64,000 nt of DNA, from contig NC_068982.1 of assembly GCF_001194135.2 (NCBI RefSeq), positions 41,308,717 to 41,372,716 of the forward strand, written 5' to 3'. Made by a program: the position numbers and the translations under genes. The DNA comes from Octopus bimaculoides. Taxonomy: Eukaryota. The notes beneath the pieces were generated by a model that was not told the origin of the DNA, did no database searches, and saw nothing but the letters and a program-made list of their open reading frames with translations. Shown here piece by piece: positions 38,901 through 58,871 of the stretch (positions are counted from its first letter, which is position 1; the number at the start of each line of letters is the position of its first letter).

Positions 38901-40551
38901 AGAGAAGTAAAGATATTTTGGACTAAACATAGCCTAAACTTTTCTGCTTATATTTCTGGAATTGGTAACCAAACTTTCTAAAAGAATTTCAAACATTACC
39001 TGAATCCAACAGTCTTATTCTAAGAGGAGTGATGTGATTATAGGTAGCATTTCCCCCGCTTAATTTTATTTTCTAAACTCCACATTATTGCATATGACTG
39101 ATTTCTTACATAGGCACAAGACCCCTAAGTATTTAACTGGTACTTGACGGTAACGACCTCAAAAGGGGGAAAGGCGAAGTTGACTATGGTACAAATTATT
39201 AAAAAGTATTATTACAATATGTGGAGACAAGGTAAATATAATGTAAAATACAGAAACTGGAACGGTGACAGTTACATTGTGAAAAATAAATTAAAAAACT
39301 CACAGCCACAATATACTGGAAAAATATTGTATAAACATACATAACACGTATGCATTTTTATAAATACGTAGACTGAAAGTAGTTTGTAGTGGATTCAAAT
39401 ATACCGTAATACTGGGACACGTATAGCCAGATAAAGCAAAAATATATACAATTAAAAACTTTTTCAGTCTTTCTTAAGAGGTGGAAAACTTTAGAGCTAA
39501 GTAAAATTGTTTAGTATGCAGCCGTATGTTATTTCAATATTGAATAACGTAAGATGTAGGTGAACAAAATCTACCACTCTTGTAATTTTAGCTAAAACGC
39601 CTAAAAAAAATCCCAAAGTTGATTACTCAAAGACTATATTTGATTACACCACATCAGAATTTAATAACACCTAAAAATTAAATGTAATTCTAATGCATTC
39701 AATTGCACGTAACGATTTGTCTCTTTTTTTTTTAAAAAAGAAAAAGATGTTAAAAAAATGTAACTGTATTTGTAGACTCAGGCGAATTGTCCACCCATTT
39801 TCGACACCCTTGATCACTTTACCTATATCACCTTGTCCTTGGAAGAAAAAAAACACGACACAACAAGCATTTTCTAGTCTTTCAGATAAGTATGGATGAC
39901 TAAACCTCACATGAAGTCAAACTAATTACCCATTAAGTGATTCTACCCCACTTGAATTAGGTGTACAAAATATCGATTTGCTAAATTGGTTAAATACTCC
40001 ACTACTTGACGGTGAATACTCCCTCTCAGGAAGTAAACAAAAAAGAAAATTATGATTGTGTACTTAGCTTTAATTAGCTTTCGTGTTTTTAATCGAACTT
40101 ATTTTTGCTAATTTGATCATTTACATTAGAATAAGATTCTTCAATCGGTTTCTAATTAGTATCAAATAGATTTCATTTTCCGTATGTATCACTAACGGGA
40201 CTAATCATGACACGTGTATGTATGTAGGTATGTGTCTAATTATTATTATTATTTTTCTAAAGACAAAACGAAGCAAATTATAAGAAATATAGTTCGATGG
40301 TTAGCACTAACCAACGATCTATATTATTTCTTATGACTTGTATTGTTTTTAGCTTAATAATAATAATAATAATAATAATAGTTTATTGCCATCAGGGCGA
40401 AGGATGCGCTGACAATACAAAACAGACATTAAGTGGGGGGGGGACATATAATGAAATGATAAAAAAAGAGAATATATACAGTATACAATGAAAAGGAAGG
40501 GAAATATACATAGTGTACAGAAGTTTAAAAAAAGTATATTATAATATTGTA

Positions 40552-40990
40552 GAAGAGGTAGACCCAGGAAGACGTGGGACGAACTAGTGAGAAAGGATCT
40601 TCAGACGTTGGGACTCACAGAGGAAATGACAAGGGACCGAGACAACTGGCGGTTTGCTGTGCTTGAGAAGACACATCAAGCTGAGTAAAACTGACGTGCG
40701 TACATACAGGAATGACCTCTACGTCCCTTTCAGCCGAGAGGTCCTTCCCTTGAGGGCTCGCGGGTGCTAGTGTCACATAAAAAAGGGACCGTGCTGGTGC
40801 CATGTAAAAAAAAAAAAAAAGCACCCAGTACACCCTGTGAAGTGGTTGGTGTTAAGAAGGGCATCTAGCCGTAGAAACCATGCCAAAATAGACAATATGA
40901 AGCTGGGGAGCTGCCAGCTGGTCAGCTCCTGTCAAACTGTCCAACCCATGCCAGCATGGAAAGTGGGTGTTAAATTATGATGATAATGAT
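40552..40990 (+). mobile_element. RTE LINE 3' end: ORF terminus, stop at 40686-40688, 3'UTR and (GAT)n tail
   Basis: RGRPRKTWDELVRKDLQTLGLTEEMTRDRDNWRFAVLEKTHQAE* is followed by the UTR found as many solo fragments in the window. Confidence 0.9.
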
Positions 40991-41836
40991 ATATATATAG
41001 CGAAGGAGAAAGAAAGAAATGATAAATATTTTCTGAGATTAATACTCCGGAAGGGGCAACATAAATAAATAAAACAGTAAAATAACATGACCCAGTTCAT
41101 TTTGGGAGGTGTGAAGTGAATAAGACCTGCTCCAAATGGAATCTGATCGTTTCACATGTTTATTTATGAGATTCGGATCTTCAAATCGAATATCTATAAT
41201 CAACAATCGCCAATTTTTCAATTTTTTTTATGGTTAGAAGTGAATAGTCGCCGATATAAACAGATTATGGAAAGTCAAAAACAAAGATATATAAAAAAAA
41301 AAACAAAGGCATCGAAGGGTGCATAGGTGATGAACAATATTGCTATTTTTTCCGGAGCAAATAAATAAATTAAATTGAAAAAAAACCTAGTCCACAGTTT
41401 TATCTTGGTGTTCTATACCCAATGTCCATAAAAATAAATATGTATTTTGATCGATGTGTGTATTTATAGCGTCTACGTTTCCCCCTTACTTCATATACAC
41501 GAATTATATATGTATGCGTATGTATACATACATATGTGTATATATATTATATACACATATATATACTACGTACATCAGTAATTACAACAAATCGAAACAT
41601 ATATATAATAAAATTGTCTTTTAATCCGTAAATGATGTAATATAGATAAAAAATGAAATTCTCAAGTACACTTGTACTATATTCATGGATGTATTTGTAT
41701 TATATATGTGTGTGTATTATATATACGTCAGTGTATTTTATATATATATATATATATATGAATGCGCGATTTTTAAAGAATTTTATCAGCATGTATTGAG
41801 TTCTATTTCTCCTGTTTGTCCTACCAAACACAAACA

Positions 41837-41871
<35 letters not shown>

Positions 41872-42681
41872 CACACACAAACATTCGTATGATATTCTGT
41901 AGCCGTGTCTACGAGTTATTTATTGTCTGTGTGTGCATGCACATTTGTCTAGAAGCTACGTACACAAATGTTGACGTAACGGCCCAATATACGGATTGCA
42001 ACTCAGTTACTAAATCTATCGTACTAAATGAAAAGTCTTTCTTTGCATTATACTTACTACTATACTGCATATTTTAAAAAAGACCAATACGGATATTGAC
42101 AGATTGACATATATAACAATATAATATAATTCGAGATCGACGGAATCGGCAGTTTACCATAAATCGAATAAGTATCATCTATAATTGATTTTTCCATTGG
42201 TAAATGAACGATGATATTATTTCGAATGTTTTGTTTTCGTCGATCTGTTACAAACGACTTCGCACACATGCAAGTTATATATATATCTGTATATGTATCT
42301 GTGCATTAACTAAAAAAGATTATTTTATTTTATAAAAATTTAACTGGTAGTATTTTAACATCAGTGAGTAAAGACATATCATTCGCAACGGGGGTTGCTT
42401 AATATTTTATTTTAGTAAAGGACATCTCACTGCAACTGTCAAACCTTATTTTATCGTTTTACCCCCACCGATTAATATAATAAAAATCTAAAAAGATGTT
42501 AATAACTCAAAGGAGCTAGAGAAATGAATATACTAGTTAATGACAACAAAAAGATAATTATACAAACATATATATATTCAAACACATTCCATATATATAG
42601 ATATATAGGTTGCAATGTATTTATTGCCTGACTATATAATAAACTAAATCACTTGGGTTAATAATTACTCAGTAAACTAAC

Positions 42682-42877
42682 CTGATCTGGGGAGCATTTT
42701 CGCACCATGATGTACTGACGAATAAACAGTCTCAACTTTATCACGTACGTCTGACGGACCAACGTTTGGACCGTTCAGATCGGTTGTCTGATGGCGATTT
42801 AGATTGCTGTTGTATCCTGATTCTGTGGGTGTTATATTTTCACTGTTGTTGATCTGTGAGGTTCCGTACGCGGCCAT
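42682..42877 (-). CDS. TAPT1: Candidate TAPT1 first coding exon
   Basis: ATG in gttctATGGcc context; 196 nt (65 codons + 1) encoding MAAYGTSQINNSENITPTESGYNS...HHGAKMLPRS; donor CAG|gttagt. Phase 1 matches the phase-1 start of exon 2. It sits in the CpG-retaining region, after a purine-rich putative 5'UTR. The N-terminus is not conserved, so the assignment is inferential. Confidence 0.72.
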
Positions 42878-43943
42878 AGAACGAAATCCACCACTTCATC
42901 CACTCTAGCTGTCTATTTCAGTCATTCTCCCTGCCACTCGTTACTTTATCTAATTTACTAACTCTTACTATACCTCATTTACTCTCACTATACGTTTATA
43001 CATTTCCCTAATTCACATTCTATATCTCTTCCAGTTACTCCACCTCCTTTATTCTTTTACTCACTCAGCATTCCTTCTCTGTACTCTATCTCTCTTCACT
43101 TTTCTATCAGTCAGTCTCTTTCTCCCCCTTCTCTCTCTTCACTTTCATATTTCTCTCTTTCTTCCTCTCTCTATCATTCTCGCTTCTCTTTCTCACTTTT
43201 TACCTGTATTAGCTGTTTTGACTACATCTCAGTAAATACTTATGTAACTTGTTATCAATTAACGAAGCTATGCTACTTAAGTTCGTCATCTCGTTCTCTT
43301 TTCTTCTTTACTTTATCTGGTCACTGTCACTCTGCATCGAAGCTTCAAGACTGTCTTTAGTTTTATACTAGTAATATAATCACGTCTCCAGTACTATTGA
43401 GGGGGAAAGCATGAATTAAACATTCTCATTTTCCTCACCCCTTGAAATATGCAATCTGAAACAATCTTATCAATTGTAATTTATTCTTGTGTTTTAATTT
43501 ATTTGTATTCTCAGATGTTTTTATTATTTCATTTATACAAGGGCTTCCTTGTAAAATCGGTTTATGTTTCATTTTCTCCACGTTCATAAAGGTTTCGATG
43601 AGTTTTTTTTTTTTTTAAATTTTATTTTTCGTTTTGAATCTTTCTCATTTGATTTCTTTTTCCGATTGCAATGTCTCTCAAATACTATTTCTTATAACAA
43701 GAGGTCTTGGACCTGTTACTTTCAACTTTATTTACATGTAAATTTTATTTTGTCCCTGTTAATTTTCCTCTTCATTCTCTGTTGTCTTTCATTTAATATT
43801 ACGTTAGTGGTTTATTTCACATTGTTTTGTTTCATAAGTGCCTATCCTAACTATATCAAACCTGCCTCTTGCTTGCTTTAAGAGACCACAGGAAGCAGAA
43901 TTGAGACTCAGTGGACAACATTTAATTTATCCGCCACAAGATA

Positions 43944-43953
43944 GTGACGTCAC
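43944..43953. promoter_or_regulatory. Perfect palindromic ATF/CREB-type site GTGACGTCAC about 1.07 kb upstream of the TAPT1 ATG
   Basis: Exact TGACGTCA core in unique sequence. Function is untested and it could be chance. Confidence 0.3.
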
Positions 43954-45623
43954 ATTCTCACTAATAATTTGCCAAAATAACGATTTCAGAATTACATCTG
44001 ATATCTCTGCCACCTTTTAAAAACTCCGAAGTACACTGTAGATCTGTGTGTTTTTTCATGCTATTAACTAATTAATTCCATTATAATGAGGAATAAATAA
44101 TTATAAATTTTCTATGTTGGAATATTAATATCATTATACAGTCATTTAAATTCAAAAGTAAAAGTAAAATCGTCTACGAACTTGACTTTATATTTTAATA
44201 TAAACTATATTAAACAGAAATGTAGATTTATTGATTTATTTGTAATCGATTAATGGTTATTATAAACCAGATATTCAAACTATTTCTATGTTTAATTACA
44301 TTCTGACTTTACAAAACTCTTTTGTAAAACTCTCAAGAGTTTATTATTATTATTATTTTTTTTTTGTATGACAAACAATAAGTGTCTTCTGTTGTCATTT
44401 GTGGAATAACTAATATCAAAATGACAAAATAGTCTTGTGGACTAGAAAATATTTTAGATAAATTACAATTTGAACTTCGTAATTTATATTTTCTCTGCAT
44501 TTGGAGTTTAAAGGGATGATAGTCTAATGAGGGATTCCGCCGAGCACGAAAGACCATGCAACTAGCATTATCCATCACCATGTTTAACTCCATTAACTGA
44601 CCCTTGGGTGCCTTTAGCTGAGCCCGCTTTGTAGCAAAGTCTCCCATCTGAGTATAATACCTTCTTCCTAACAGACTGAAAAATGTCGAGCTTGCTTCCT
44701 TTCCTGGCTAAGCCATTAAAAAGACCCCAAGGTTAAGTAATGAAAAAAATGTTACAAATGTGGTCCTTTTTTTCTTTTCATTCATACCGTATCTACATTG
44801 TGACATTGTATTATATAGATGGTAGTAAAGATATTCTCTTTAAAATGGGACATATATGTAAGTGCAGCGGCTAGTTTTCTGACAAAAACTTTGAATCTCA
44901 GTAGCAGGCAGTTTGGAAAAACATACTGTAGCAAGCAGTTTCGCTGAAGATAATCAGATTCATTTATCGACTTCATCTCGCCTGTGTTGCTGGACAAATC
45001 AATAAATCATTTTCAACATTATAAAATCTTAACTGAAACAATATTCTGCCATAAAAAAAATATATATACAGATGCAGAGATAAAAAAAAAGATCGATCAA
45101 TTGTGCGACAAGTTGGAAGTGGATCATATTTTGGAGAACGTGGTATGTGAAGAGTTAGCGTGAAAGTTCAGGATCATGAAGGTCGTATTCTTGTACAACG
45201 CGGCTAGGTGCCAATGTCAGATAGGCACAAGACTTGTGTTGCCGACTGAAAGAGGAAATCTGCGGCAAATATAGGCCTTTCGTGAGATTGGAGGTAACGT
45301 ACATCAGCAGGAGTCCAGTCGGAGTCACGTGCCGGGTTGACGATCAGAAAAGATGAAAGCAAAACCATTTTGATCTTCAGGAATTATAAAATTATCCAGC
45401 GAGACTCTCCAGACAATTCCGTGGTTCAGAAAAAAGACGTGGGAAAACAAACTGAAAGTCTGCAAATTGAGTCTAAATTAAACTAAAAATCACAAAGTAC
45501 GAAATTGCACTTCTTTTTACTAAACTATCGTTGCAGATGCAATCAAGAGCAATATTATTTTTAACGACACTATATCTAAATTATGTCTTAATGATTATTG
45601 AAATGTGACTTAAACATAACCGA

Positions 45624-45785
45624 TTTGAGGAAGCTTTCTGCCGTTTGACCGGAAAATATCATATTTTGAGAACAGATAGATCAACTGTTGTGAGCAAGAA
45701 AGTGCAGGGCGGGATTGCCCAATTGGTTTCTATTAAATATGAGATAACAATTATTCAGTCAGAAACTACCCCTGGAGTCCATTAG
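45624..45785 (+). mobile_element. APE-endonuclease remnant of a CR1/L2/Jockey-group LINE
   Basis: FEEAFCRLTGKYHILRTDRSTVVSKKVQGGIAQLVSIKY matches the Y..xRxDR....GG.A.LV endonuclease motif. Flanks (about 45100-46020) are probably the same decayed element. Confidence 0.6.
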
Positions 45786-46789
45786 ATGCATATTTCTATT
45801 ATTTTCCAAATTCTAATTATAAATTCTCATATTTTCCCTTTAAATGAATCAATATTCAGAAATTTTAGATTTTATACTTAGTGAAATATTGGAATGATAT
45901 GAATCAAGATAATCAGGAAGAAGGAGTACAAGATTTTATCAGCAATATTACGCTTATTCGGCACATTAACGGACCGACTCATATTAATTACAACACTAGA
46001 TTTAATTTTCACAAACAGTTAAGTTTCGTTTTATGATCCAGAAAGTGAAACGACTGAAGTCAGCAAAGATTAATTTACCGGAAATTCGACAATTAAACAA
46101 AAGCGAAGTAGTTTTCTTTGAAAAGAAATAAAAGTAATAAAAGTAATCCTAATATAATAAAAAAATGATTGCAGATCCATATTTTGTGAGATGCTTTTGG
46201 TTTATTTTATATTTTTTTAAATAATAAACGAAAATATAAGAATTAGAATACCACCGAAGGCATTTAATTATTAGCCAGCAATACATAGGTTCTAGAAGGT
46301 AATGCATTGGTTAATTACAGTAATCAATTATGAATCATCTCAACGATGTAAGGGAGTTTACTGCAGTTTCAACGCTCGTGCCGTGCCACGGAATTCCTTT
46401 CAGTAAGTTCATTGATTTTAATGATATCATCCACGATTCTCACGAGTAGTTGTATAAAAGATCCAGCCTCTTCTTCTATACGTAAACAATTTCGAAAATA
46501 GGTTTTCAGTTTCAAAATCAAGAAAAAAGCAGCATTTTCCAATCTAATTGCCGAGTTTGGTCAAGTATTCCTAAACATTATTTTAGTTTCATTTTAAGCC
46601 TATTTTGTGTATGATAATTATAAGTGATGTAACATTGACGTATCTTATCATTTTTGACTTTTATGAAAATATTAAATTAACACGAACATTTATTTGCACG
46701 AAAGAAAATTACAGGAGAACTCTCATCTAATTCTTCCAGATCTCTCTTAAAACTGTATTGAAACCATTTGTGGGGAATTTTTTTTTTTT

Positions 46790-48640
46790 ATCACAGCAGC
46801 CGGTCGCACACTACAAGGTCGCAGGACCTACCACAGCAGCATCTCAGTCCCCTAAAGACGTCAGCTCCCACTCTGAGTGCGATGAAGATGCGGAATTCAT
46901 CTAGACTGAGTAGACCTCTAATGTTGACCACAGGCAGGGCATCAATCCAGTCCCCTGAGAATTTTGCATTAGCTGAAAGTAGGTGACACCTTGAAAATTA
47001 ATCAGATTGGTCAAGGAGATAGTTGAAAGTGGCACCTGCACGTAGATTATCCCATGCTCTCTGTTTTCGTCTATCCTCCATTGTAACTGGAACTGACAAA
47101 GTTAGCTCTCTCCAGCGTGATAAAGCTTTATCCATCTCTCAGTTGGAATTAGTCCACGTTGGAGAGGAGAGCATGTTGCCTACTAAAGGGGAGCAAGCGT
47201 GGATGGAGGGAAGAAATAAAGACGAGCACTTGCGCAGACCTAGACCTCCAAACCATTTAACCAAAGCAGTTTGGTCGCGGGGGTCTGGGAAGAGTTTGAC
47301 ATTGACCAAGCATTCGAGTTTCCTGAAGATTAGATCGTCAAAGTATTGGGGGGACGGCAGGAATCTGTAAGAGGGACTAACTATCAGAAAATACAATAGC
47401 TTAGGAATTGACAAGTAATTCCTAAGTATAAAAAACCTTAGTGGGGTTCAATTCAAGGTTTTTAAAAAGTTGTTCGTGGTTAACCAATTTAGACCTAAAG
47501 ATGGACTCAAAAGTTAGGAGAAATTGGAGGGCACCACGCTGATGAAGGAGGAATCGCGATTGAGGAGAGGGAGTCAGCAGATAGTTTAGTAGTCTGCTCA
47601 TGCGAAGTTGGGTGGTTGAGGAACCAGAGCTCGCATTTAGTCGGCTAAAACTTCCATGAGGTCAGGCATACTTTTGCTGTGAGCCGTCGAAGAGTACAAC
47701 CAACTGCTATGGGGCGGAGGTCACCGTTGGGCTTGGTGAGACCAAATAGTTTGGCCCCAAAGAACAGGGGACGAATGTAGGCAAGGATACTCTCGGACGA
47801 GAACAAGTTTATAAACTGTGTTAGGTTCTCCAAGAGTTCGAACCCAGATCACCAGCTGACAGGGAGATACCATCCTTGAGATGCTGAGGTCGTAAGCCAT
47901 CGATCCCAGCTGGAAAAGAGTCAATTGCCCTTCTGATATTGTCAGGAGTGAAGATGGGTTGTAGAAATCTTGGTGGATCGGACCAGTGTAGGTAATCATC
48001 TGGAGGGGCCGGAGGATGTTTCTCCTTCAGTTGGACGAGGGAGGACAGAGAGAAAAGAAGGCGAACAGCCCCTTTACTGTCAAATTCGCTGAATTTAGCA
48101 TTAACAGCCTTCTTTAAGTTAGGTGGTCGAACATTGTTCGGGGTTGAGCTGATGATCGACCTGAGATGAACGGTGGTTAGGATAGATTCGAACAGCTCGA
48201 ACTGCCATTTTAGGGAAGAAGTGAAGGATCCACTATTCCCATTCGTTACGTGGAGGGAGACCAAAGGGAACAATTTCTGCCAATCCGTGTTGTTGTTGGA
48301 TAAGCAGACATTTTTCAGCAGTTTCGAGAGAACACGGGTTAGGCAAGTTCGAGCACTCTTAGAGATCCGACCGACGAGCTTCAGCTTGGACAAACCCTGG
48401 AGGGCGGCGCCAAAATCTTCAACAGGGATCTGGACTTCAGAGCAAAGTTGTCCTACTAAGGATGTCAGAGCTGAAGTGACATCAGTTGCATGTCCAAATA
48501 GAAAAACTTTCGACTTGAACCTTAGTAAGGCCGACGCAGCTCCTGTGGTAGCTTCGACTACACAACTGACATTTGATGGTCTTCAAATAACGACTTGTAC
48601 GGGTGCAGAGAATACAACTTGAAGGTGAGCTAGCATTTCT
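46790..48640 (-). mobile_element. CRE-clade (R2-group, REL-type) non-LTR retrotransposon relic with N-terminal PHD finger and deleted RT core
   Basis: Motifs in order: C4HC3 PHD (48616-48479); RISKSAR...DWQKL; KGAVRLL; LKEKHPPAP; AGIDGLRPQHLKD; LRPIAVGCTLRRLTAK; TKCEL; LRNYLSIPKLLYFL; GGLGLR; SGDWIDALP...FRIFIALRVGA...CCCG. These match animal CRE-type ORFs. Frameshifts and stops are present. Confidence 0.85.
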
Positions 48641-49265
48641 ACGAATTTATACAAAAATTTTTAATTCTTATAAATTAGTTCGCGTTAACTGGCCTTAATC
48701 TTTTTATTCTTGCATTTGTGTAGGAAACGAGAGGAACTTTTTAATCATATTCTTTCTGATTTTATAATTAACAATGCACCACTCTTCTCTCTTTTTTTTT
48801 TCTTTTCTTAAACCATTTCAAATTTCAAATAATCAAGAGACTGCAAAAATTTCATTCAATACATATATATTTTTTAAATCTCTGGAAAAACAATTTGAAA
48901 TGACTTTTACATGCTAAGAGTTGCAAGAAATTTAAGAAGGCAGTACATTTATAGTTCTGAAAATGAAATAAAACATTGAGCTTTTCTGAAATTTGTAAAT
49001 TTTAGAAAATCTATTGCTTGCTTTAATTGACGATAATCATATTCTTAATTTTAATAAACAGCAATCAACATAACAGGATCTACGTAAACTTTTATTTCTT
49101 TAAGCCATTCATTTCTGGTGAGCCTTTATACCTGGCACATATAAAGGTTATTTAACTTCTCTTCCGTATTGCAAAAAGCCCTGTCTTCATTATTCATTTT
49201 ACTTCTATATCACAATATTTCAAGCAAACTACAACGCTCTTCTTTGATAAGACTATTTTGTTTAA

Positions 49266-49770
49266 GGTAATCTTCAAGTTTACAGAGGTAAAAAAGTAAA
49301 TAAAAATATACAAGGGAAATAACTTAATGTCTTACTGGTATTATCCGTACTACTCTGAAAAGGTTTTTTTTTTTAAGCTGTTTATAAATAAATCACACAC
49401 TTTTTTTTTTTAAACAAGTTTGCATGGTGCTAAACAATCCTCGCAGGTAAACTTATTCCTAATAAGCCGACGGCGCGCACACCATTCCAACATTTTGTCT
49501 TGAACTGCTGCATAATTCATTAATATTCCAATATTCTTGTAAAATTAATTGACGAGTGAGGATTTCATTTTGAGGAACAATAAGTTGTTGTGCAGCCGGT
49601 CTTCCACGAGGCATTTTCGATCTCTCAGCCGGTACTATGATATTCAATTACGTGTGTGATTTATATATAAACAGTTAACTTCACTCACGGATAATACTAG
49701 TGAGACGTTAAATTATTTCCCTTGTATATTTTTATTTACTTTTTTTACCTCCCTAAACTTGAAGATTACC
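49266..49770. mobile_element. Mutator (MULE)-type MITE, 505 bp, TIRs of about 83 bp, 9-bp TSD
   Basis: TIRs 49266-49348 and 49687-49770 both begin GGTAATCTTCAAGTTTA and are highly similar. An exact direct repeat TTTGTTTAA lies at 49257-49265 and 49771-49779. Confidence 0.85.
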
Positions 49771-50879
49771 TTTGTTTAATATGTTTCTTCAGCTTTCGCT
49801 AAAAACATACAATAAAAAATTAATTTCCATCATTAGAACTCAACTACTCTGTGATCATATAAAAGCTTTCCTCTAAATCAGTGTTTCACAAAGTGGGAGG
49901 TACCACCGAACGACCTCTAGAGGTGGTGGAAAGTTTTATATAGGTTGTACGGACCAAAGGGAGCTGTTTATAAGGGTACGATCGATGCATCTGTGTGTGT
50001 GTGTGTGTATATTAAAATCTATTTGTCTTGTTTAAATAATAGGAAAAAATTAATAAATGTAATATGGTGAACTGCTTCGTAGTCACTGTTGCAACACATC
50101 AAACACAATTCGGAATATAAAGATAAATTTCAACTGGTATCTCTAACAAAGACGTGTTTGGGCTTTACAGGAGCCATGAGAAAAGGGTTGGGTCAATAAC
50201 TAAAGTCACGCAATGATGCGTTAAATATTCGCTTATATTAGGGCGGTGTTGCGGCAAGTAGTCGCCTGCATCAAGATTGTACTCGGAACTAAATTAGTCA
50301 ATCCTTATATTACGTATATGTATATTAAAAGAAAAGCGGCAAGCTGGCATTATCGTTAGCACATTGGATAAAATGTTTAGCGGCAATTAACCGGCCCTTT
50401 ACATTCTGAGTTCAAATCCTACCGAGGTCAACTTTGTCATCCCTTCGAGGTCGATAAAATAAAGTACCAGTCAAGCACTGGAGTCGATGTAAGAGTCTTC
50501 TCTTCTCAAAGTTGCTGGCTTCGAACCCTGCAACGAACTAGTGTCCCGTTCAAAGCGAATGTTATGATCTCGATCTCGCCATAGAAACCAAGTAACCGAC
50601 CTTATGAGTGTTAGGGCTCAAGAAATAATAAAAATAATAAAAGGAACATTGGCAGAAAACAAATGGTGAAAGTTGAAAGAAATTTGAGAAATATCAACTT
50701 TTGGTGTCGATGGCTTTCTACACAAACAATTTAGCTTCTGATGTAAAACATAAAAATAAAAATATATATCGATTAATTTATGGACAGCGTATAGAACGAA
50801 ATATTTCGTTGAATAATTTATACAAACGAAAAACAAAAACAAAAAAAGGAGAAAGAAAAACAAAAAAAACACATCAATG

Positions 50880-51352
50880 CAGCACCAAGTGCTTTATTTA
50901 GTCCCACATCCGAAGGTTCAACAGAACCTAATGAAACAAGCCAACACGCTCGTGGCATTACTATGGGTGATGGCTAGGCTAAGGTGTTGGAAAAGCCAAG
51001 CATCCTTACGGGCATCACCTGACACCTCAGTAAGGCGAGCCGCCAACAATGGCAAGAACATCGTCGTTAGCGGCCCAGCCCCTCAAAACGCCACAGACTA
51101 GATTGGAAGAGATAGTTCATAGCCAGATCCCGATACTTCAGGGTTTTGTTCCGTTCAGCTACGGAAGCAGTGACTCTCCTATTAACCGTCTGGGCAAAGC
51201 AGCCTGGTTGCGGGACTCTGGAAAGAGTCTAACACTGACCAAGCAAGTATTCGAGTTTCCTGAAAATTAGGTCGTCAAAACATTGGAGAGACAACGATAA
51301 TCTATGAGGGACTAACTCTGAGAAAATAAAACTTAGGAATCGACATTCCTGG
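50880..51352 (-). mobile_element. Second CRE-clade fragment including the C-terminal end
   Basis: About 51205-51352 aligns by eye with about 47270-47422. The distal part reads ASVAERNKTLKYRDLAMNYLF and ARLTEVSGDARKDAWLFQHLSLAITHSNATSVL, like the REL-domain C-terminus of CRE elements. Confidence 0.75.
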
Positions 51353-51586
51353 AATCTTTAATTGGAGAAATCATTATTTTAAATCAGTGGAGCTGTGTAA
51401 TCAGGCCTTCAGTTGAGCGGCGACCAAAATTCTGACGCCTCAGTAAGTAAATGGAAAAATGAATTTAACAGTTTTCGTGTTTTTAAATGACTAAAATGGT
51501 TTTTCCGTGATGTCATTGCTTTACCTACAATTCACTGTCTCAACTTAAGCTATTTGCTCGCCGAGTACAACTCCAATATTTCACAT

Positions 51587-51815
51587 TACTCTTTACTCTT
51601 TCATTTGTTTCAGTCATTTGACTGCGGCCATGCTGGAGCACCGTCTTTAGTCGAGCAAATCGACCCCAGGACTTATTCTTTGGAAACCTAGTACTTATTC
51701 TATCGGGTGTCTTTTGCCGAACCGCTAAGTTACGGGGACGTAAACACACTACCATCGGTTGTCAAGCGATGCTGGGGGGACAAACACAGACACACAAACA
51801 TACACACACACTTTA
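51587..51815 (-). mobile_element. SINE family A1 3' half, CpGs intact
   Basis: Near-consensus tail half ending at the internal (CA) tract. Confidence 0.85.
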
Positions 51816-53657
51816 ACACATACTTTTTTTCTTTTTAATGAATTTATCAACAGTAGCGAGATCCGTGAATATAAATCTATTAGGTTATTTCTGAAAAAGA
51901 AATCCAACAAAATCGGACCAGAAGTGTGTATGGATGGGGGTGGCTTAATAAATTTTCTAAAAATTTTTTACCATAAAAAGCTCTCCCTCGTCATTTGTAA
52001 GGGTATGGAGAGAAAAAAAATTTGATCCCCATCAAAACAGAAAAAATCCAACTCATGTGGGTGGGTGTGTTATTCCGAAAAAGTCCGCTAAGGTTATTCT
52101 ATTGCGAAATTTGCCCGGTGACGACGGGATACTCAGCTAGTGCATGTGTGTGTGTGCGTGTGTGTATAAACAAGTAGAAGTGTGTATATTTATATATATA
52201 AACAAGTATAAACATGCATATAATATGTATGCATGTACATTTTTCCTTCCGTTGTAAAAAAAAAAAACGCATGGGCGCATGGATTTCGACTGAGGTTTTC
52301 AACAATGAAAAGTGATCTATTTGATATTGGATTTGCGGAAAACACTAAAAACTGAGGTTAATGTTATTAATAATTATATTCGCAGTTTAGGGTTTTTCCG
52401 AATTTATCGAAACCAGCACTATTAGTCACAGGAATGATCGAATAGCAATTTTGACCCAATTCAATTAAATCAACTACCAGTCAGTTAGGTTACTAAGCCG
52501 GTTATTATGCATTGTTGCAAGCAAATTTCACTACATTTCAAACTGCACTCTCCCCAAAACTACTTGCACTACAATGAATCAACAACAAGTGATCCTTAAA
52601 CAATATATTGAAAAAAGTATTTTAAGGTGCGGCAAAGAATTAAGATATACAATTTAAGGCTTTAGGAAATCGATGCTAATGGTTCGGTATCTTGAAAAAC
52701 GAGTTGTCCCTAATGTTGTTACATACATCAACTATGCTTAATAGAACAAGACAAACAATAATTTTCCTATGTTCTTTTTTTCTGAATTATGACTCTATCT
52801 TTTATTTGTTTGTCATAGAACTACGGCCATGTTGGAGCATAGCTTTGAAGGGTTTAGCCGAACAAATCGACCCTAGTACTTCTTTTTTTTTTTAAAGTCT
52901 GGTACTTATTCTCTTGATCTCTTTAAAAAGAGACCAAGAGAATAAGTACCGAATCGATAAAATACGGGGACGTAAACAAACCAACACCGGTGTGTTAAGT
53001 GGTGGTGGGGGACAAACACACATGACAGGCTTCTTTCAATTTCTGTCTACCACATCCACTCACAGGACTTTGGTCAGCCTGGAGCTATAGTAGAAGTTAC
53101 TTGTCCAAGGTACCACGCAGTGGGACTGAACCCGGAACTATGTAGTTGGGAAGAAAATTTCTTGTCACGCCTAAACTTTTTATACAAAGTGCGCCAGTAA
53201 GTTTTAAATTTCTATGTACTAGTGACTTTTTTGTTTGATCTTCAATATGCAACGAATTCAAAAGTATTGAAAACTATTGCTCTAAACCGTCGTTCGACCT
53301 GCTACAGTCTTCCTAAAAGCTAAAATCTTCATAAAAGTATACCCTTCCATCTTGAAAAGAGAAGGAAATATTGGATAAGAGGCATAGCGATAGAAGTGCC
53401 CCCCCCCCACATCCGAATTTGTTTCCTTATGACTTTCTGAGAATGGATTTTTTTTAATGAAATTTTCTACAAATATCTTCAAGATGGTATAGATTACGAT
53501 TATATCGAATATTTGTCGTGAAAAACTTTTTCAGAGTTGGGTAGGTGGAGACGGAGTTTTGAATAATTCTCGTGCTTCGGCTTTGTTTGATCATAACTTT
53601 CAGAAAAGTGGGTATTTATTTAAAGATATTTTCTACAAATACTTTTTTCAGATGCTA

Positions 53658-55214
53658 TTAGGTTGTCAAGAAAGTTCTTGCGGTTTTTAACCTTTAAATT
53701 CAGATGCACATATCTCGGCTCAAACAAAACTTTATTAATCTAAATAAACACCATCAGAATCAACCCACTTTTACCAACGCGAAACAAGTTTATATATTTC
53801 AGTAGCGTAAAAATCCTGCGTTCTGGTGGCGATGAAGTCGTTGAAGGCGTGTCCGACATCGTCTTGGTTTTTGAAGCATTTCTCACGCAGGAAGTTGTCG
53901 AGATGCATGAAAAAGTGGTAGTCGGTAGGTGAGAGGTCTGGTGAGTATGACGGATGAAGCAGTTTCGTAGCCCAATTCGTTCAACTTCTGCAGGGTCAGT
54001 TGTGCGATGTGTAGCCGAGCGTTGTCGTGGAGAAGAATTGGTCCTTTTCTATTGACCAATGCTGGCTGTTGTTGTTGGAGTTTCTTATGCATTTCATCCA
54101 TTTGCTGACAGTACTTCTCCGCTGTAATGGNNNNNNNNNNTGGCTTCGGGAAGTGCTGTGGAGCTTCGTCGGCGTTGCCGGTTGTTGTAAAGAATCCACT
54201 TTTCATTGCAAGTCACAGTCCGGTCAAGAAACGGGTCGTTCTTGTTGCGTAGAAGGGAAGACGACACTTCAAAACAGCGTTTTTTTTTGTTTTGTTTTTT
54301 TGTCGTTCAATTCGTGCGGCACTCATTTCTCAAGTATTTTTGTTTTTCCAATCTCTTTCAAGTGGCTGGAAATCGTCGTACACGTTACGTCTGTAGTAAC
54401 GCCGTGCGCATGCGTAGTCTTACGCATGCGTGGAATTCAACAACCAAGCTTTCCCGCTTTGATTGATCTTTTTCTTGCTGGCCAGCGATTGAGCAAGGAC
54501 GTATCTAGTTGTCTCTCCATCTTTCGAACTCACGCTGGACAGCTCACATCAATATACCAACGTCCCAACAACCATGTTCTCACACACCGAAGACGTCTCA
54601 ACAAACAAGATTAAAGATGTATATTTTCCACCATGAATAAATATTATTTGTGCTGATAGTCTGGAGTTCAGCGTTCCGTTCAATACTTAATTTAATATAG
54701 GAAAGTCAGGTGTACATCTAATGATGTATAACCCACTTTCCTATACGTCTAATTCAGAAGCAGGCTCTCAAACAGTTGTGTGTGGATTGGCTTCGACGAA
54801 GGCTCTTAGTTGATCGTTGTCAACATCCGATGGCCGACCACTACGCTTATCACTTTCAAGACTCTCGTCACCGCTACGAAATTTCTTGAACCCCTATTGT
54901 GCTGTACGTTCATTAGTGGTTCCTGGGCCAATCGCATCGTTGATATCGTGAACTGTTTCAGCAGCTTTTTGGTCTAGCTTGAACTGGAATCAGAAAATTG
55001 TGCGAATTTGCTTTTTGTCCATGTTGTATTCAACGTTCCGGAAAAAAAAATGGCCTAATTATTAAAAAAGAAAAAGAGTAACACGATTAGATAGAGCGAA
55101 AAACAGGATTTAAAATTATATATAAAGTCAAAGTAATTTAATGAAAATTAATTTGAAAATACATCATTTAAAACCAAAATTAAAAATTCCGCAAGAACTT
55201 TCTTGACAACCTAA
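53658..55214 (-). mobile_element. Complete-ended mariner (DD34D) relic with a nested insertion
   Basis: Perfect 26-bp TIRs TTAGGTTGTCAAGAAAGTTCTTGCGG (53658-53683 and 55189-55214), TA on both sides. Transposase MDKKQIRTIF..., VPHEL, LLHDNAR, SPDLSPTDYHFF. Contains stops, a 10-N gap and a 351-bp insert. Confidence 0.95.
54393..54743. mobile_element. Unclassified 351-bp insert in the mariner, 7-bp TSD, hairpins at both ends
   Basis: TACGTCT at 54386-54392 and 54744-54750. Removing the insert restores ELDV|TCTTISSHLKEIG. Stem cgcatgcgta-gtct-tacgcatgcg at 54407-54430; inverted repeat taggaaagt / actttccta at 54698-54706 and 54735-54743. Confidence 0.75.
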
Positions 55215-58200
55215 TATTATATTGGAATTTAATGTGAAAAAAAAAAATGGAGGCAGGTGTGGATATTTCTTGCACTTTAACTTTGTTTCCTCATACGTTT
55301 TGATGATGTAGTTTACAATTATGTCGAGAAAATAATTACATTCGTATCGAGACGTGTGAATTATTCGAAACTCCTCGTCTCCCTCGACACCTTCCGCAGA
55401 AAATTTTCACCACGATATAATCGTCATCGACACCACTTAAAAGATATTTGGAGAAAACTTCATTAAAAAAAAAAATTTTTTTTCAGAAATTTATGAGGAA
55501 ACAAAGTCATTGGGGCTCAATTCTGTAGTTGTGTCAGATGAGGTAGTCAAAGATACATAGTATCTGAGAGTTGGACGGGATGCTTATCATAGCTATGCTC
55601 ATTAGGGCTTACCTAGAGTTAAAGAACAATACGAAGATTTACTAGAATATAATATACAGAACTATTTGACTATATCCAGTTAATTCGAACAGTGTTACAT
55701 AATTTGTTGTTTTCATTCATAACGAAGAGCCTGTGAATTTAACTATCACTTTAAATTAATAAACCTTAAAACACTAACTGTATAAATGCGCGCATGTTGT
55801 GTGTGGATAGGTTTGTGAGTGTTTATGTGTATGTTAGCATATATTTTCGTTGCAAGTAAGAATCAATTCATGGACACATTGACTTCAACTTCTCCACGCA
55901 TTGAACTGCATAACAAAATGTAATGGAACTAATGTCTTTCATAGTTCTTCATAACAATGTTGGGATCTTTCTGATTTGGCCGGCGCCACTTTTTATTTAT
56001 GTTTTATTTAGTGTGTTTTCTACCGAAACACTTTAAAACTTATCGTAGCAAAACATTTTTTTTGTAATGTTTGAATACAAATTCGTTTTAGATTGGAAGA
56101 CTTTTGTATTATTGCGGACCTTAACTCGCTGTTGTTGTTTAACCATAGTTTATTCCTCACCATAACCGATCTAGGAACTTAAGGCATTCCCGCCGTGACG
56201 ATCCGGGTTTTTTTCTTTCTCCGGGCATAGTGCCCTATTGACATTATTTATATGTGTCCTTTTATAAGGCGGTATGATGACTTGAGAAAAAGTTATCGCA
56301 GGAGGAACGACCGCATAAAAGTTGCTATCGTTGGTCGGAGGACTTTGTTCTTACTGTGTAGCGGAAATCAGTTTTGATCGAGCATTGACTGCGACACGCG
56401 AATGGTCCACAGAACGGCAATCTGCAACTCAGCGCCTTGGTATCGAAGACCGCTTATGATACTGCTTCCCCTAGAATAAAGATGACGAACTTCTTTAGTT
56501 CTGAAGCGAAGGTACAAAATAGAGGTATAATCTAATTAAGGGCATTGAACTTATTATATTCACTAAAACCACAAAAAGGATACTGAGAACTTAATATAAC
56601 AGTAGTGAAGGGCGAAAGGGAATCTCCATCCTCGAGCGCATATGTGAAAGATCGCAAAATATCCTCTTGCTTATCAAAATTATCATCACAGGGTGTTTGA
56701 GAACCCTTGCCACGCCACTGCTGAGGATCTAATTAAGGTGTAAAAAAATAACTGAATGCTAAACCTCTTAATCTCTAATATAGCAATCTCACATATCTAA
56801 TATTACTGAAGCTCTTATCACAAAAACTAGGTAGGCTTCCTCCTTATCGAAGCTTTGTCTTATTGAAAATATTTCCACCCTGCTCTGTTGCAGAAATTTT
56901 ATGAAACTCAATACAATGGAGTACAGCTAATGTTAAACAAGTAAACATCTTGGACTGCAAACAAAAGTCTATTCAACTGGCTGGTAAATTTTCGTTCATG
57001 AACACTCTCCAACCACGAGCTCTTCTACCTACATGGATAACTGCACCTCTAAACTAATGTCTATTTCTTCATCCAGTCAACTATACTGTGCTGTATAATT
57101 AAAAATTTAAAGCGGAATAAATTGTATTGACTTGTACGTGCTGTTTTTGAAGGAGTTACGAAAAGTTATATTGTAACTTCTCGACATGCCAAAATGTCTG
57201 CTAGGAATATATAGACAAACCGGGATTTTTTTTTTTTTTTTTTTTACTAATTAGTTACAAAAAATTATTTTTTCTATGTGCCGGCCAAAAAGAAAAGATC
57301 CATTTTAGTATTTTTATTTCGAATATGGTGTTAATTTGGATTTGGAAACTTGAATGAGAACATGAATCTATGGCAATTATTAACGCGAAACCCACCCCTC
57401 TCAAAACTGCATCATTCTAGAATTCTCTGTCTTCCACTTCCACAATATTTTGTCTTTCAAATTACCATTAAACCATTCCAATCATATGCATCCATTCATC
57501 TCCTACCTTTCACTTCAGGAAAGCTATCTCAGACTGTGTGAAACGTCCTTTTTTCTGGTTCATCAAAAAGTTATGATTCGCATTCGGAATTTGGTTGTCA
57601 ACAAATGGCTAAAAATGAGCGACCTAACCAATACAAGTTATTAAAACATGGGGATTTTTCACAGTTTAAGAATTGCGACACAAATGTCTACTCATATATT
57701 TGTTGGAATCTTAATTCTTTGTTTTTTTTTTATTCCTTATCTCTTACTTGTTTCAGTCATAAGATTGCGGCTATACTTGGGTATCGCCTTGAAGGGTATT
57801 AGTCGAACAAATCGATCCCAGCATTTATGGTTTTTTAAAGTCTCGTATTATTCTATTTGACTTTTTTGCCTAATTGCTAAGTTACATGGACGTAAACAAA
57901 CCAGCACCGGTTGTCAAGCGGTAGTGAGGTACAAGCAAGTATACACACACACTCGACGGCTTCTTTCAATTTCCATCTACCAATTCCACTCACAAGACTT
58001 TAATCGGCCCGCGGCTACAGTAGAAGTCCTACTGCGTGGTCTAAGTTGCCACGTAGTTGGACGGAGCAGTAAATTATTTCGAACCAAAAGTTAAGTACAT
58101 TTGAGGAGAAATGTTTGGAAAATAGTTTGTATTTATCATTTTTATTTCTAGAAACAGGCTATTTCGAGAAGCGCAATAAGATCTCTTGCTTTCTCACGCG

Positions 58201-58660
58201 ACTGAGGAATATGTTGAGTTCTGTAACGTGCTCATAAGTCATTTGACTGTCACATTCAAACTGCCATCGACTTCAACGGTTTATTGTTTTATAGTTTAAT
58301 ATTAATGATGACTGCTTTTGATATTTGTATCAGTTTTACATTGATTTCAAGCGAGAACCAGAGAAAAGCAAAACGAAAAATGTCAAGAATGTAAACGATT
58401 CTCTAAAATACTAAAACGTTAAAAAAACGCAAAAACAAAACATACAAAAATCAAACGATTTTACTTTTAAACAACAAAACGAATTTTTATATCTATTATT
58501 ATTTTGTTTTAGTAATTCTATACATCGTCATAAACCTTTCTTCACATGTACGCATACTTTTTAATACATACATAATATACATATTTTATATATAAATATT
58601 ATTGCACGCCCCAAAAAGATCGTCCATGTATTTTCTATTATAAACAATCGACTTTAATAT

Positions 58661-58871
58661 ATGAAAACGACACAAAACATGATTCATCCTATTCACGGAA
58701 ATACACAATTTGAAACGAATTCGACTTCAGAATCTCTGAATAATCAACATCGACTGTACATTGATGACATTAATACTCAAACATCGATGCGAAAGTTTCG
58801 GAGGAAACAACGTTCTCTGTCTGTTCAAATGAACAAGACAGAGAAAGCAATTGACGATAAATATGTTCCTG
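58661..58871 (+). CDS. Candidate first coding exon of an unidentified neighbouring gene
   Basis: ATG 58661; 70 codons of non-repetitive hydrophilic sequence (MKTTQNMIHP...RKFRRKQRSLSVQMNKTEKAIDDKYVP), then CCTG|GTAAAT donor followed by pyrimidine-rich sequence. Lies near the right edge of the CpG-retaining domain. No homology recognised. Confidence 0.4.

What the first reader, a model, noticed from the sequence alone, without database searches (positions are those of the whole stretch)
48479..48616. PHD finger at the N-terminus of a CRE-clade (R2-group) retrotransposon ORF
Seen: the minus strand reads CILC-TRTSRYLKTIK-CQLC-SRSY-H-RS-C-VGLTKVQVESFSI-W-T-C-N-*-C. This is a full C4HC3 PHD signature, and the single TGA could be a CpG-decayed CGA. 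It lies about 85 nt upstream of, and one frameshift away from, the CRE-type ORF (RISKSAR, GLRPQHLKD, RPIAVG..LRRL). The ORF track misses it. Established: PHD fingers occur in ORF1 of CR1/L2/Jockey-group LINEs and some Ingi/Vingi-group elements, whereas R2/CRE-group N-termini typically carry C2H2 or Myb DNA-binding domains. Inference: this may be a lineage of REL-endonuclease retrotransposons that uses a histone-mark reader for chromatin-guided targeting. Its location here in the CpG-retaining region about 4-6 kb upstream of TAPT1 would be compatible with that. I am not aware of a description but could not search.
Basis: partly seen in the sequence, partly recalled or inferred. Interest (0 to 1): 0.8.

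Follow-up and report, generated by a model that had tools for sequence, protein, structure and literature searches.

The report
Dead retrotransposon copy starting with PHD finger
The PHD zinc finger is real and belongs to a decayed copy of an R2-type (restriction-like-endonuclease) LINE retrotransposon whose intact relatives in many eukaryotes begin their single protein with the same finger, but nothing shows that it reads a histone mark.

Summary
Observation confirmed. The minus strand at 48616-48479 encodes a complete C4HC3 PHD finger (Pfam PF00628, 29.2 bits against a cut-off of 24). It is the only such pattern in the window, and none appeared in 200 simulated windows.

It is not a chance neighbour of the RT. 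The PHD, the N-terminal region and the RT fingers line up in the same order and spacing as the best database relative, P0001. Fifty of the 120 best-scoring relatives carry PHD, RT, CCHC and a PD-(D/E)xK endonuclease in one 950-1100 aa ORF on ~3.5 kb contigs. Two 99.5%-identical intact copies sit on different Diaphorina citri chromosomes.

The window copy is dead: an out-of-frame ATG, an in-frame TGA, at least two frameshifts, about 230 aa of RT palm deleted, and no endonuclease.

R2-group membership is well supported. R2 proteins are the best solved relatives, aligned from the RT through the endonuclease. CRE-clade placement is only indirectly supported, by a barnacle homolog deposited as 'SLACS protein'.

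The histone-reader idea is not supported for this PHD type, which is strongly basic and lacks the cage Trp in the window copy. A TAF3-like PHD does occur in a sister lineage. I found no paper describing PHD fingers in endonuclease-type LINEs. Verdict: a new variant of a known kind, of moderate interest.

The parts
48634..48636 (-). Candidate start codon of the element ORF, now out of frame with the PHD
   Evidence: ATG lies 20 nt upstream of the first Cys codon, in the other reading frame. Intact relatives start 7-8 residues before the first Cys (P0004, P0121).
48479..48616 (-). PHD finger (C4HC3), basic 'type A', interrupted by one stop
   Evidence: Pfam PF00628 scores 29.2 bits against a cut-off of 24. 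The pattern is unique in the window and absent from 200 simulations. tblastn aligns P0001 residues 17-63, P0004 3-53 and P0121 7-53 here. All eight ligands and the Trp before the last CxxC are invariant in alignment A1.
48482..48484 (-). In-frame TGA inside the last CxxC of the PHD
   Evidence: Read directly from the sequence.
47848..48417 (-). Family-specific helical N-terminal domain (IPKGAR-like RISKSAR, W..L..F, KHPPAP) and RT motif 0 (DGLRPQHLKD). It sits in another frame than the PHD.
   Evidence: tblastn aligns P0001 residues 82-291 here. The AlphaFold model of P0001 shows helices 80-235 at pLDDT above 90. Motif 0 aligns to the GSAPGPDGI of R2.
47606..47848 (-). RT fingers (LTKPNGDLRPIAVGCTLRRLTAKV), after a further frameshift near 47848-47839
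   Evidence: tblastn aligns P0001 residues 292-353 and P0374 residues 139-214 here.
47436..47605 (-). Site of the internal deletion. About 230 aa of RT palm, including the YLDD box, are missing.
   Evidence: P0121 residues 344-575 have no counterpart; the next match starts at residue 576, window position 47435. P0061 residues 228-447 are likewise missing.
46818..47435 (-). RT thumb (GGLGLR) and linker, up to the first Cys residues of the CCHC motif (CCCGRSCD), with stops and frameshifts
   Evidence: tblastn aligns P0121 residues 576-782, P0374 439-649 (119 bits) and P0283 680-889 here.
46778..46793 (-). End of recognisable element: TGA, then T, then A12. The endonuclease domain is absent.
   Evidence: Sequence read. 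No tblastn match to residues beyond about 782 of P0121 lies downstream.
50918..51345 (-). Second, more heavily deleted relic of the same family: a thumb piece joined to the C-terminal end of the endonuclease domain and its stop
   Evidence: 78% nucleotide identity to 47262-47413 over 156 bp. tblastn aligns P0374 residues 772-817, P0283 1013-1057 and P0191 911-985 here. The translation reads AERNKTLKY ... SGDARKDAWLFQHLSLAITHSNATSVL.

Best explanation
The window holds a dead, internally deleted copy of a single-ORF non-LTR retrotransposon of the R2 group, the LINEs that carry a restriction-like endonuclease (RLE). It spans about 48636 to 46778 on the minus strand.

The element's native protein is ordered as follows: PHD finger, a family-specific helical domain, RT, thumb, CCHC knuckle, PD-(D/E)xK endonuclease. 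The PHD is therefore part of the element. It is neither a host exon nor a neighbouring insertion.

Intact elements of this family would move by target-primed reverse transcription. The C-terminal endonuclease nicks the target and the RT copies the element's own RNA from that nick. This is inferred from homology to R2.

The N-terminal finger occupies the position where relatives in the same RT family carry C2H2 fingers, RFX or other modules. It is therefore most likely the interchangeable target-engagement module.

For the PHD type found here, which is basic, has a conserved N-R-K-K/R loop, and lacks the cage Trp in the window copy and in most relatives, I think sequence-independent binding is the most likely role. 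The ligand would be nucleic acid or an acidic chromatin surface, not methyl-lysine reading of the basic H3 tail.

Confidence in the identity and architecture is about 0.95. Confidence in the targeting-module role is about 0.5. Confidence in the specific ligand class is about 0.35.
For: - **The PHD is real and non-random**.
- **Same order and spacing as intact relatives.** P0001 residues 17-63, 82-291 and 292-353 map to 48622-48479, 48417-47848 and 47848-47663. The PHD-to-domain linker is about 20 codons in both.
- **Single ORF in relatives.** P0001, P0004 and P0082 have PHD and RT in one ORF. P0121, P0128, P0145, P0153 and others add CCHC (CxCG..D..G.H.LSC..RH), KRPDG, WDaTC.DT and E..K..KY.
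- **Frequency.** 50 of the 120 best full-length clusters are PHD+RT+RLE.
- **Whole elements recovered.** L001 is 3615 nt with one 972-aa ORF and an A-rich tail. The two D. citri copies are 99.5% identical over 3.78 kb on different chromosomes, each with an intact 1010-aa ORF.
- **R2-like.** The family profile hits R2 proteins at E 1e-24, aligned from the RT to the endonuclease. That is ahead of L1 ORF2p (7e-11) and group II RTs (5e-9). No AP-endonuclease domain appears in the Pfam scans.
- **Module swapping in the same RT family.** C2H2 (P0290), PHD+RFX (P0333), PHD+C2H2 (P0153, P0146), and a CCHC-like finger (P0101, P0027).
- **Basic character.** Net charge +5.3 +/- 2.1 (n=63), +6 in the window. 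42 of 63 fingers have three consecutive K/R residues in loop 1.
Against: - No copy from the window's own genome with an intact PHD-RT ORF was available. The closest relative is only 38% identical overall (P0001). A 184-aa fragment, P0020, is 56% identical.
- The ligand of the PHD is pure inference from composition. Some type-A fingers do carry Trp at H-2 (P0304, P0310, P0320, P0331), so a histone-reading ancestor or subset is not excluded.
- The basic loop could equally be a nuclear localisation signal.
- The helical domain between the PHD and the RT gave no significant structural match, so where DNA or RNA binding resides is unknown.
- Two relics of the family lie 2.3 kb apart in the same orientation inside an unmethylated-looking 20-kb domain. 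That would be compatible with a regional insertion preference.
Confidence: 0.75

Rival explanations
1. The PHD reads a histone mark such as H3K4me3 and steers the endonuclease-type LINE to promoter-proximal, unmethylated chromatin.
For: - The domain family is best known for reading H3 tails.
- Structure and sequence matches of the finger include PHF2, PHF8, CFP1, BPTF and AL1.
- A sister lineage carries a TAF3-like PHD with the cage Trp (P0158, E 3.5e-11). P0146 and P0153 have acidic W-F-H fingers.
- Both relics in the window lie inside a 20-kb CpG o/e ~1 domain.
Against: - The window finger has Ser at the cage position (S-Y-H). Most type-A fingers lack Trp there.
- Type-A fingers are strongly basic, whereas TAF3 PHD is about -6. 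That is unfavourable for binding the basic H3 tail.
- One or two dead copies cannot establish a preference.
- The D. citri copies sit in AT-rich, unrelated flanks.
Confidence: 0.15
2. The PHD has nothing to do with target choice. It acts as a nuclear import signal carrier, a protein-protein interaction or ubiquitin/SUMO-pathway module, or an RNP assembly zinc knuckle.
For: - The conserved N-R-K-K/R loop resembles a monopartite nuclear localisation signal.
- Relatives of the same family have captured deubiquitinase domains: UCH/USP at the C-terminus and OTU at the N-terminus. This hints at interplay with the ubiquitin system.
Against: - The finger sits exactly where other members of the same RT family, and R2-group elements generally, carry DNA-binding fingers (PMC4640811, PMC12278014).
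- No direct evidence exists either way.
Confidence: 0.2
3. Chance juxtaposition. The PHD is a host exon, a fragment of another element (for example a CR1/L2-type ORF1), or a random Cys/His pattern next to an unrelated RT relic.
For: PHD fingers are known in ORF1 of CR1-like LINEs (cited in PMC8557442, PMC3708506). The window is full of other transposon debris.
Against: - The order and linker length match PHD-RT relatives.
- The window's PHD itself aligns to the PHDs of those relatives at 36-54% identity.
- No pattern appeared in 200 simulated windows.
- The finger carries a stop and is not in any long ORF.
Confidence: 0.02

Closest known systems
CRE clade of non-LTR retrotransposons (SLACS, CZAR, CRE1, CRE2 of trypanosomatids; MoTeR/Cnl1-like elements of fungi)
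   Same: A single ORF with the RT followed by a CCHC knuckle and a restriction-like endonuclease, zinc finger(s) at the N-terminus, and an A-rich tail in some relatives (PMC12278014). Two barnacle homologs were deposited as 'Retrotransposable element SLACS protein'.
   Different: Classical CRE elements insert site-specifically into spliced-leader genes and carry 1-2 ordinary zinc-finger motifs. Here the finger is a PHD, and copies sit at unrelated loci. No RT phylogeny with CRE references could be made.
R2 elements (R2Bm, R2Tg; solved TPRT complexes)
   Same: The best solved relatives. The family profile aligns from RT motif 0 through the thumb to the CCHC/PD-(D/E)xK endonuclease (E 1e-24).
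   Different: R2 has N-terminal C2H2 plus Myb and targets 28S rDNA. No Myb-like match was found in the modelled N-terminus. A single family member is about as similar to a bacterial group II RT as to R2 (2.9e-5 against 6e-5), suggesting a branch outside R2 proper.
PHD fingers in other transposons: ORF1 of CR1/L2-type LINEs, Rehavkus DNA transposons, Chlamys Penelope-like elements
   Same: A transposon-encoded PHD finger, thought to act on chromatin (PMC8557442 citing Kapitonov and Jurka 2003; PMC3708506).
   Different: In those cases the PHD sits in a separate ORF1 of AP-endonuclease LINEs, or is inserted inside RT/EN of Penelope-like elements. Here it heads the single RT-RLE polyprotein of an R2-group element.
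NeSL/Utopia elements with accessory N-terminal domains
   Same: RLE-type LINEs with variable N-terminal zinc fingers and captured accessory enzymes, such as the Ulp1-like cysteine protease (PMC4640811). This parallels the UCH and OTU domains seen in relatives here.
   Different: The accessory domains differ, and no PHD is reported there. The relationship of the RTs was not tested.
TAF3 / BPTF / ING-type H3K4me3-reading PHD fingers
   Same: The same fold and ligand pattern. The PHD of sister lineage P0158 is 46 bits, E 3.5e-11, to TAF3 with the cage Trp kept.
   Different: The window's finger lacks the cage Trp and is basic rather than acidic.

Membership tests
PHD finger (Pfam PF00628) | C4HC3 ligand pattern with canonical spacing | tested here: met
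   C-x2-C-x11-C-x2-C-x4-H-x2-C-x17-C-x2-C at 48616-48479, with one stop in the last x2.
PHD finger (Pfam PF00628) | Score above the curated Pfam threshold | tested here: met
   29.2 bits against a cut-off of 24, E 9e-7, covering profile positions 1-47 of 47.
PHD finger (Pfam PF00628) | Conserved Trp two residues before the last Cys pair | tested here: met
   I-W-T-C in the window. Trp occupies this position in 26 of 28 family fingers.
H3K4me3-reading PHD subclass (TAF3/BPTF/ING type) | Aromatic cage including Trp two residues before the zinc-binding His | tested here: not met
   The window has S-Y-H. Only 5 of 28 and 11 of 74 family fingers have Trp there. TAF3 has D-W-Y-H, aligned to P0158.
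H3K4me3-reading PHD subclass (TAF3/BPTF/ING type) | Binding of methylated H3 tail | not testable with these tools
   Needs peptide binding assays. Composition (net +6 in the window against about -6 in TAF3) argues against it.
[quoted passage not shown] | Single ORF with RT followed by a CCHC motif and a PD-(D/E)xK endonuclease; no AP endonuclease | tested here: met
   Met in intact relatives: CxCG..D..G.H.LSC..RH, KRPDG, WDaTC.DT, E..K..KY. Pfam finds RVT_1 and no Exo_endo_phos. In the window, copy 1 keeps the RT ends and the start of the CCHC, and copy 2 keeps the endonuclease tail.
[quoted passage not shown] | RT most similar to R2-type RTs among characterised RTs | tested here: met
   Profile against PDB: R2 1.2e-24, 3.4e-24 and 4.8e-24; R2Bm 1.4e-12; L1 ORF2p 7e-11; group II 5e-9.
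CRE clade | RT groups with SLACS/CZAR/CRE1/CRE2 in an RT phylogeny | not testable with these tools
   No CRE, NeSL, R4 or Hero reference sequences could be obtained (Repbase is not available; the supplements of PMC3708506 and PMC4640811 lack them). The only indirect pointer is the deposited names: homologs KAF0306974.1 and KAF0290112.1 are named 'Retrotransposable element SLACS protein'.
CRE clade | Site-specific insertion into spliced-leader RNA genes with target-site duplication | tested here: not met
   The two D. citri copies have unrelated AT-rich flanks. The window copies lie in an intergenic-looking region among other transposon relics. Non-specific CRE-like families may exist, so this does not exclude the clade.
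CRE clade | One or two N-terminal zinc-finger motifs | tested here: inconclusive
   Some relatives have C2H2 fingers (P0290, P0347, P0153). The window lineage has a PHD instead.
R2 clade proper | N-terminal C2H2 plus Myb, and a 28S rDNA target | tested here: not met
   No Myb in Pfam or in the Foldseek search of the modelled N-terminus. The copies are not in rDNA.

The most novel reading that the evidence does not exclude
A large, so far undescribed lineage of CRE-like endonuclease LINEs, spread across animals, red algae and marine protists, treats its N-terminus as a plug-in targeting socket. Modules seen include a basic PHD, a TAF3-like H3K4me3-type PHD, PHD+RFX and C2H2. Several branches have also captured deubiquitinase domains (USP/UCH, OTU). 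PHD-bearing branches would then choose insertion sites by chromatin state rather than by DNA sequence. That would explain how a normally site-specific group became dispersed.
Probability: 0.3. Interest if true: 0.65.

Novelty: new variant of a known kind. Interest (0 to 1): 0.4.

Why it matters
R2-group LINEs are the model for target-primed reverse transcription. They are being engineered for gene insertion, and their N-terminal DNA-binding modules set where they land.

A natural, widespread series of the same RT-endonuclease chassis fitted with different N-terminal modules would serve two purposes. The modules seen here are a basic PHD, a TAF3-like PHD, RFX and C2H2, and at least one family (in the psyllid D. 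citri) looks recently active.
- It would be a ready-made comparative system for asking how these elements choose targets.
- It would test whether chromatin readers can replace sequence readers in that role.

For the window itself the feature is only a dead repeat with no expected function.

Tried and rejected
- **Literature.** Seven full-text searches for PHD in RLE/CRE/R2-group LINEs, for CRE in metazoans, and for the family's peptide motifs found no description. Kapitonov and Jurka 2003 and Kojima's 2020 review are not held.
- **Clade reference RT sequences from paper supplements.** None are held, so no RT phylogeny was made.
- **Foldseek of the modelled N-terminus against PDB.** Only weak matches (E >= 2e-3) to L1 ORF2p and R2Bm, plus PHD hits. 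The helical domain at residues 80-235 remains unassigned and no Myb was found.
- **Neighbour-joining tree of the N-terminal region.** PHD-bearing sequences are concentrated in one part, and the window groups with P0001 and P0002. Branches are long, and many 'no PHD' labels are N-terminally truncated proteins, so I draw no conclusion on the number of acquisitions from it.
- **'Trp at H-2' as a type-B marker.** This proved imperfect. Several otherwise type-A fingers have it.
- **Target-site duplications of the D. citri copies.** The AT-rich flanks make any short duplication ambiguous.
- **TAPT1.** It was not verified. No exon was recognisable among ORFs of at least 95 aa, and I ran no further search on it.
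Full report
**1. The observation**

On the minus strand, 48616..48479 translates to CILCTRTSRYLKTIKCQLCSRSYHRSCVGLTKVQVESFSIWTCN*C. This is C-x2-C-x11-C-x2-C-x4-H-x2-C-x17-C-x2-C, with TGA at 48484..48482.

- Pfam's PHD model (PF00628) matches end to end at 29.2 bits, against a curated cut-off of 24 (E 9e-7).
- A PHD regular expression that tolerates one stop finds this site and no other in the six frames of the window. It finds none in 200 second-order Markov simulations of the window.
- The finger ends 86 nt upstream of the listed ORF 48393..47821(-), and in another frame.

**2. What surrounds it**

Three-frame translation, and tblastn of database relatives back onto the window, show one element on the minus strand. 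In the coordinates of the intact relative P0121 (972 aa):

| P0121 residues | Window position | Content |
|---|---|---|
| 7-53 | 48619-48479 | PHD |
| 82-280 | 48381-47836 | helical N-terminal domain and RT motif 0 |
| 277-343 | 47848-47642 | RT fingers, RPIAVGCTLRRL |
| 344-575 | no counterpart | RT palm with the YLDD box |
| 576-782 | 47435-46827 | thumb GGLGLR and linker, up to the first Cys residues of the CCHC knuckle |

The sequence then runs into TGA-T-A12 at 46793-46778. The endonuclease domain is absent.

An ATG sits 20 nt upstream of the first Cys codon, in the wrong frame. Intact relatives start 7-8 residues before that Cys.

The copy therefore carries an out-of-frame start, an in-frame stop, at least two frameshifts, a deletion of about 230 aa, and a 3' truncation. 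It is dead.

A second relic of the same family lies at 51345..~50918 on the same strand. It is 78% identical at nucleotide level to 47262-47413. It consists of a thumb piece joined to the last ~50 residues of the endonuclease domain and the stop. It lacks the 5' part, so it says nothing about the PHD.

**3. Is the PHD part of the element?**

Yes.

- A search with the stitched peptide found 385 relatives. The best, P0001 (38% identity, 97% coverage), and also P0004 and P0082, carry a Pfam PHD at the N-terminus of the same protein that continues into IPKGAR ... DGLRPQHLKD ... RPIAVGCTLRRL.
- In the four-way alignment, all eight zinc ligands and the Trp before the last CxxC are invariant. The linker between the finger and the next conserved block is about 20 residues in P0001 and about 20 codons in the window.
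- A profile search of 1.84 billion cluster representatives found 17,052 family members at E <= 1e-3. Among the top hits are long proteins that match from the PHD onwards.
- Pfam finds PHD plus RVT_1 in them. Their C-termini read CxCG..D..G.H.LSC..AGR.PRH ... KRPDG ... WDaTC.DT ... E..K..KY, which is a CCHC knuckle and a PD-(D/E)xK endonuclease.
- In a second search with a profile of 28 full-length members, 51 of the 120 best clusters have a PHD upstream of the RT. Fifty of those also have the endonuclease.
- These ORFs of 950-1100 aa sit on contigs of 3.3-3.7 kb, so the contig is essentially the element. One example is L001: 3615 nt, one ORF at 434-3352, and an A-rich tail.
- In the psyllid Diaphorina citri, two copies on different chromosomes are 99.5% identical over 3.78 kb. 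Both keep the 1010-aa ORF, so a PHD-bearing member was active recently.

I could not obtain other copies from the window's own genome. The argument therefore rests on cross-species relatives and on the shared order and spacing.

**4. What kind of element**

The family profile finds R2 proteins as the best solved relatives (E 1.2e-24 to 4.8e-24). For R2Tg the alignment runs from RT motif 0 through the thumb to the CCHC and endonuclease. L1 ORF2p (7e-11) and group II intron RTs (5e-9) follow. No AP-endonuclease domain is present. Membership of the R2 group, the LINEs with a restriction-like endonuclease, is therefore tested and met.

No reference sequences of CRE, NeSL, R4 or Hero were reachable.

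- Two barnacle homologs (KAF0306974.1, KAF0290112.1; 49% identical to P0121) were deposited as 'Retrotransposable element SLACS protein'. SLACS is a CRE-clade element (PMC12278014).
- If that name came from a best hit in a curated protein set that also holds R2 entries, it favours CRE over R2. That provenance is my assumption, not a result.
- A single member is about as similar to a bacterial group II RT as to R2. That would fit a deep branch.
- The classical CRE hallmark, insertion into spliced-leader genes (PMC12278014, PMC3636483), is not seen. The D. citri copies have unrelated AT-rich flanks.

**5. What the PHD is likely to do**

Within this one RT family the N-terminus is a variable socket:

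| Module | Members |
|---|---|
| PHD alone | window, P0001, P0121 |
| PHD followed by a C2H2 finger | P0153, P0146 |
| PHD plus an RFX DNA-binding domain | P0333 |
| C2H2 fingers | P0290, P0347 |
| a CCHC-like finger | P0101, P0027 |
| nothing recognisable | others |

In R2-group elements N-terminal fingers are the usual feature (PMC4640811, PMC12278014). From general knowledge of R2, those modules bind the target. By position, then, the PHD is most likely the target-engagement module. This is an inference.

Two kinds of PHD occur.

- **TAF3-like type.** P0158 carries a finger that is 46 bits, E 3.5e-11, to the H3K4me3 reader TAF3, with the DxWYH cage Trp kept. P0146 and P0153 have acidic W-F-H fingers.
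- **The window's type.** Its signature is C-x2-C-x3-N-[RK]-[RK]-[KR]-x3-4-C-x2-C-x4-H-x-[ST]-C-V-G-L-[ST]-x2-Q-A-x2-L-x2-W-x-C-x2-C. It usually has no Trp at the cage position (Ser in the window). It is strongly basic, +5.3 +/- 2.1 over 63 distinct fingers and +6 in the window. The TAF3 finger shown is about -6.

Readers of the basic H3 tail are typically acidic. I therefore rate methyl-lysine reading as unlikely for this type (about 0.15). I favour sequence-independent binding of nucleic acid or an acidic chromatin surface, with a nuclear-import or protein-interaction role as the alternative.

Some type-A fingers do carry the Trp, so the question stays open.

The AlphaFold model of P0001 (pLDDT 83.7, pTM 0.78) shows a small PHD followed by a confident helical domain (residues 80-235) packed onto the RT fingers. 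Foldseek gives only weak matches for that domain, and no Myb.

**6. Genomic setting**

CpG o/e is 0.71-1.15 between 40 and 60 kb, and 0.12-0.53 elsewhere. The 'CpG-retaining' description therefore holds.

Both relics of the family lie in this domain, 2.3 kb apart and in the same orientation. That is a faint hint of a regional preference. It is equally explained by a local rearrangement or by chance. Other transposon debris lies there too, including a mariner fragment at 53883-54206.

TAPT1 was not verified.

**7. Comparison with what is known, and novelty**

PHD fingers are documented in ORF1 of CR1-type LINEs, in front of the AP endonuclease of some CR1/Crack elements, in Rehavkus DNA transposons, and inside Chlamys Penelope-like elements (PMC8557442, PMC3708506).

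Variable N-terminal fingers and a captured Ulp1-like protease are documented in NeSL/Utopia (PMC4640811).

Seven full-text searches found no description of a PHD heading an RT-RLE polyprotein. Repbase and Dfam could not be consulted, so consensus sequences may already be deposited without comment.

I classify the finding as a new variant of a known kind. It is an R2-group, probably CRE-like, LINE lineage whose N-terminal finger is a PHD. The window's copy itself is an ordinary dead repeat.

**8. Verdict**

- Observation: confirmed.
- Interpretation: partly supported. The architecture is right, the CRE label is plausible but untested, and the histone-reader mechanism is unsupported for this PHD type.
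- Interest: 0.4.

Noticed in passing
window 50918-51345 (-): A second, heavily deleted relic of the same LINE family: a thumb piece fused to the C-terminal end of the endonuclease domain. It is 78% identical to 47262-47413 over 156 bp. It lies 2.3 kb upstream of the PHD-bearing copy, in the same orientation, and is followed by a T-rich tract.
   Followed up: partly
relatives P0125, P0126, P0129, P0279, P0280, P0284, P0351, P0379, P0160; locus L004 (ORF 286-4473): Several distinct clusters of the same RT-RLE family carry a full ubiquitin carboxyl-terminal hydrolase (USP, PF00443; 195 bits in P0126) fused after the endonuclease. It is one uninterrupted ORF on contigs barely longer than the ORF (Tara Oceans marine metagenome). 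A full-text search found no report of a deubiquitinase in a LINE.
   Followed up: partly
relative P0352 (1271 aa): Another member of the family has an OTU-like cysteine protease (PF02338, 31.5 bits) near its N-terminus, after a C2H2 finger. This is a second, unrelated deubiquitinase fold captured by the same LINE family.
   Followed up: no
relatives P0333, P0153, P0146: Combined N-terminal modules occur. P0333 has a PHD plus an RFX DNA-binding domain. The D. citri element and P0146 have an acidic W-F-H PHD followed by a C2H2 finger.
   Followed up: partly
loci L002 3278-7049 and L003 3269-7049 (Diaphorina citri GCA_024506315.3): Two 99.5%-identical 3.78-kb copies with an intact 1010-aa PHD-RT-RLE ORF lie on different chromosomes, so the element looks recently active. 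Near the 3' end there is a poly(T) run of variable length on the sense strand, followed by a shared AATATGTACCTACCTATGT.
   Followed up: partly
window 40001-60000 versus the rest: CpG o/e steps sharply. It is 0.71-1.15 between 40 and 60 kb and 0.12-0.53 on both sides. This looks like an unmethylated domain flanked by methylated, CpG-depleted sequence.
   Followed up: partly
window 18524-18862 (+) and 53883-54206 (-): Mariner-type transposase fragments (Pfam Transposase_1, 30.9 and 23.8 bits). The second is interrupted by a 10-N assembly gap.
   Followed up: partly
window 465-1376 (+) and 21372-21526 (+): A 303-aa ORF with a gag-like CxxC...C knuckle and a low-complexity basic tail, with no Pfam hit. 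Separately, a short ORF (…TVEGTRGRGRPRKTWAEVVRQDL…) resembles the C-terminal tail of another LINE family and runs into an assembly gap.
   Followed up: no
window 3165-3609, 17380-17788, 21526-22051, 32972-33849, 54131-54140: Five runs of N (assembly gaps), several flanked by (TA)n/(TATATA)-type simple repeats.
   Followed up: no
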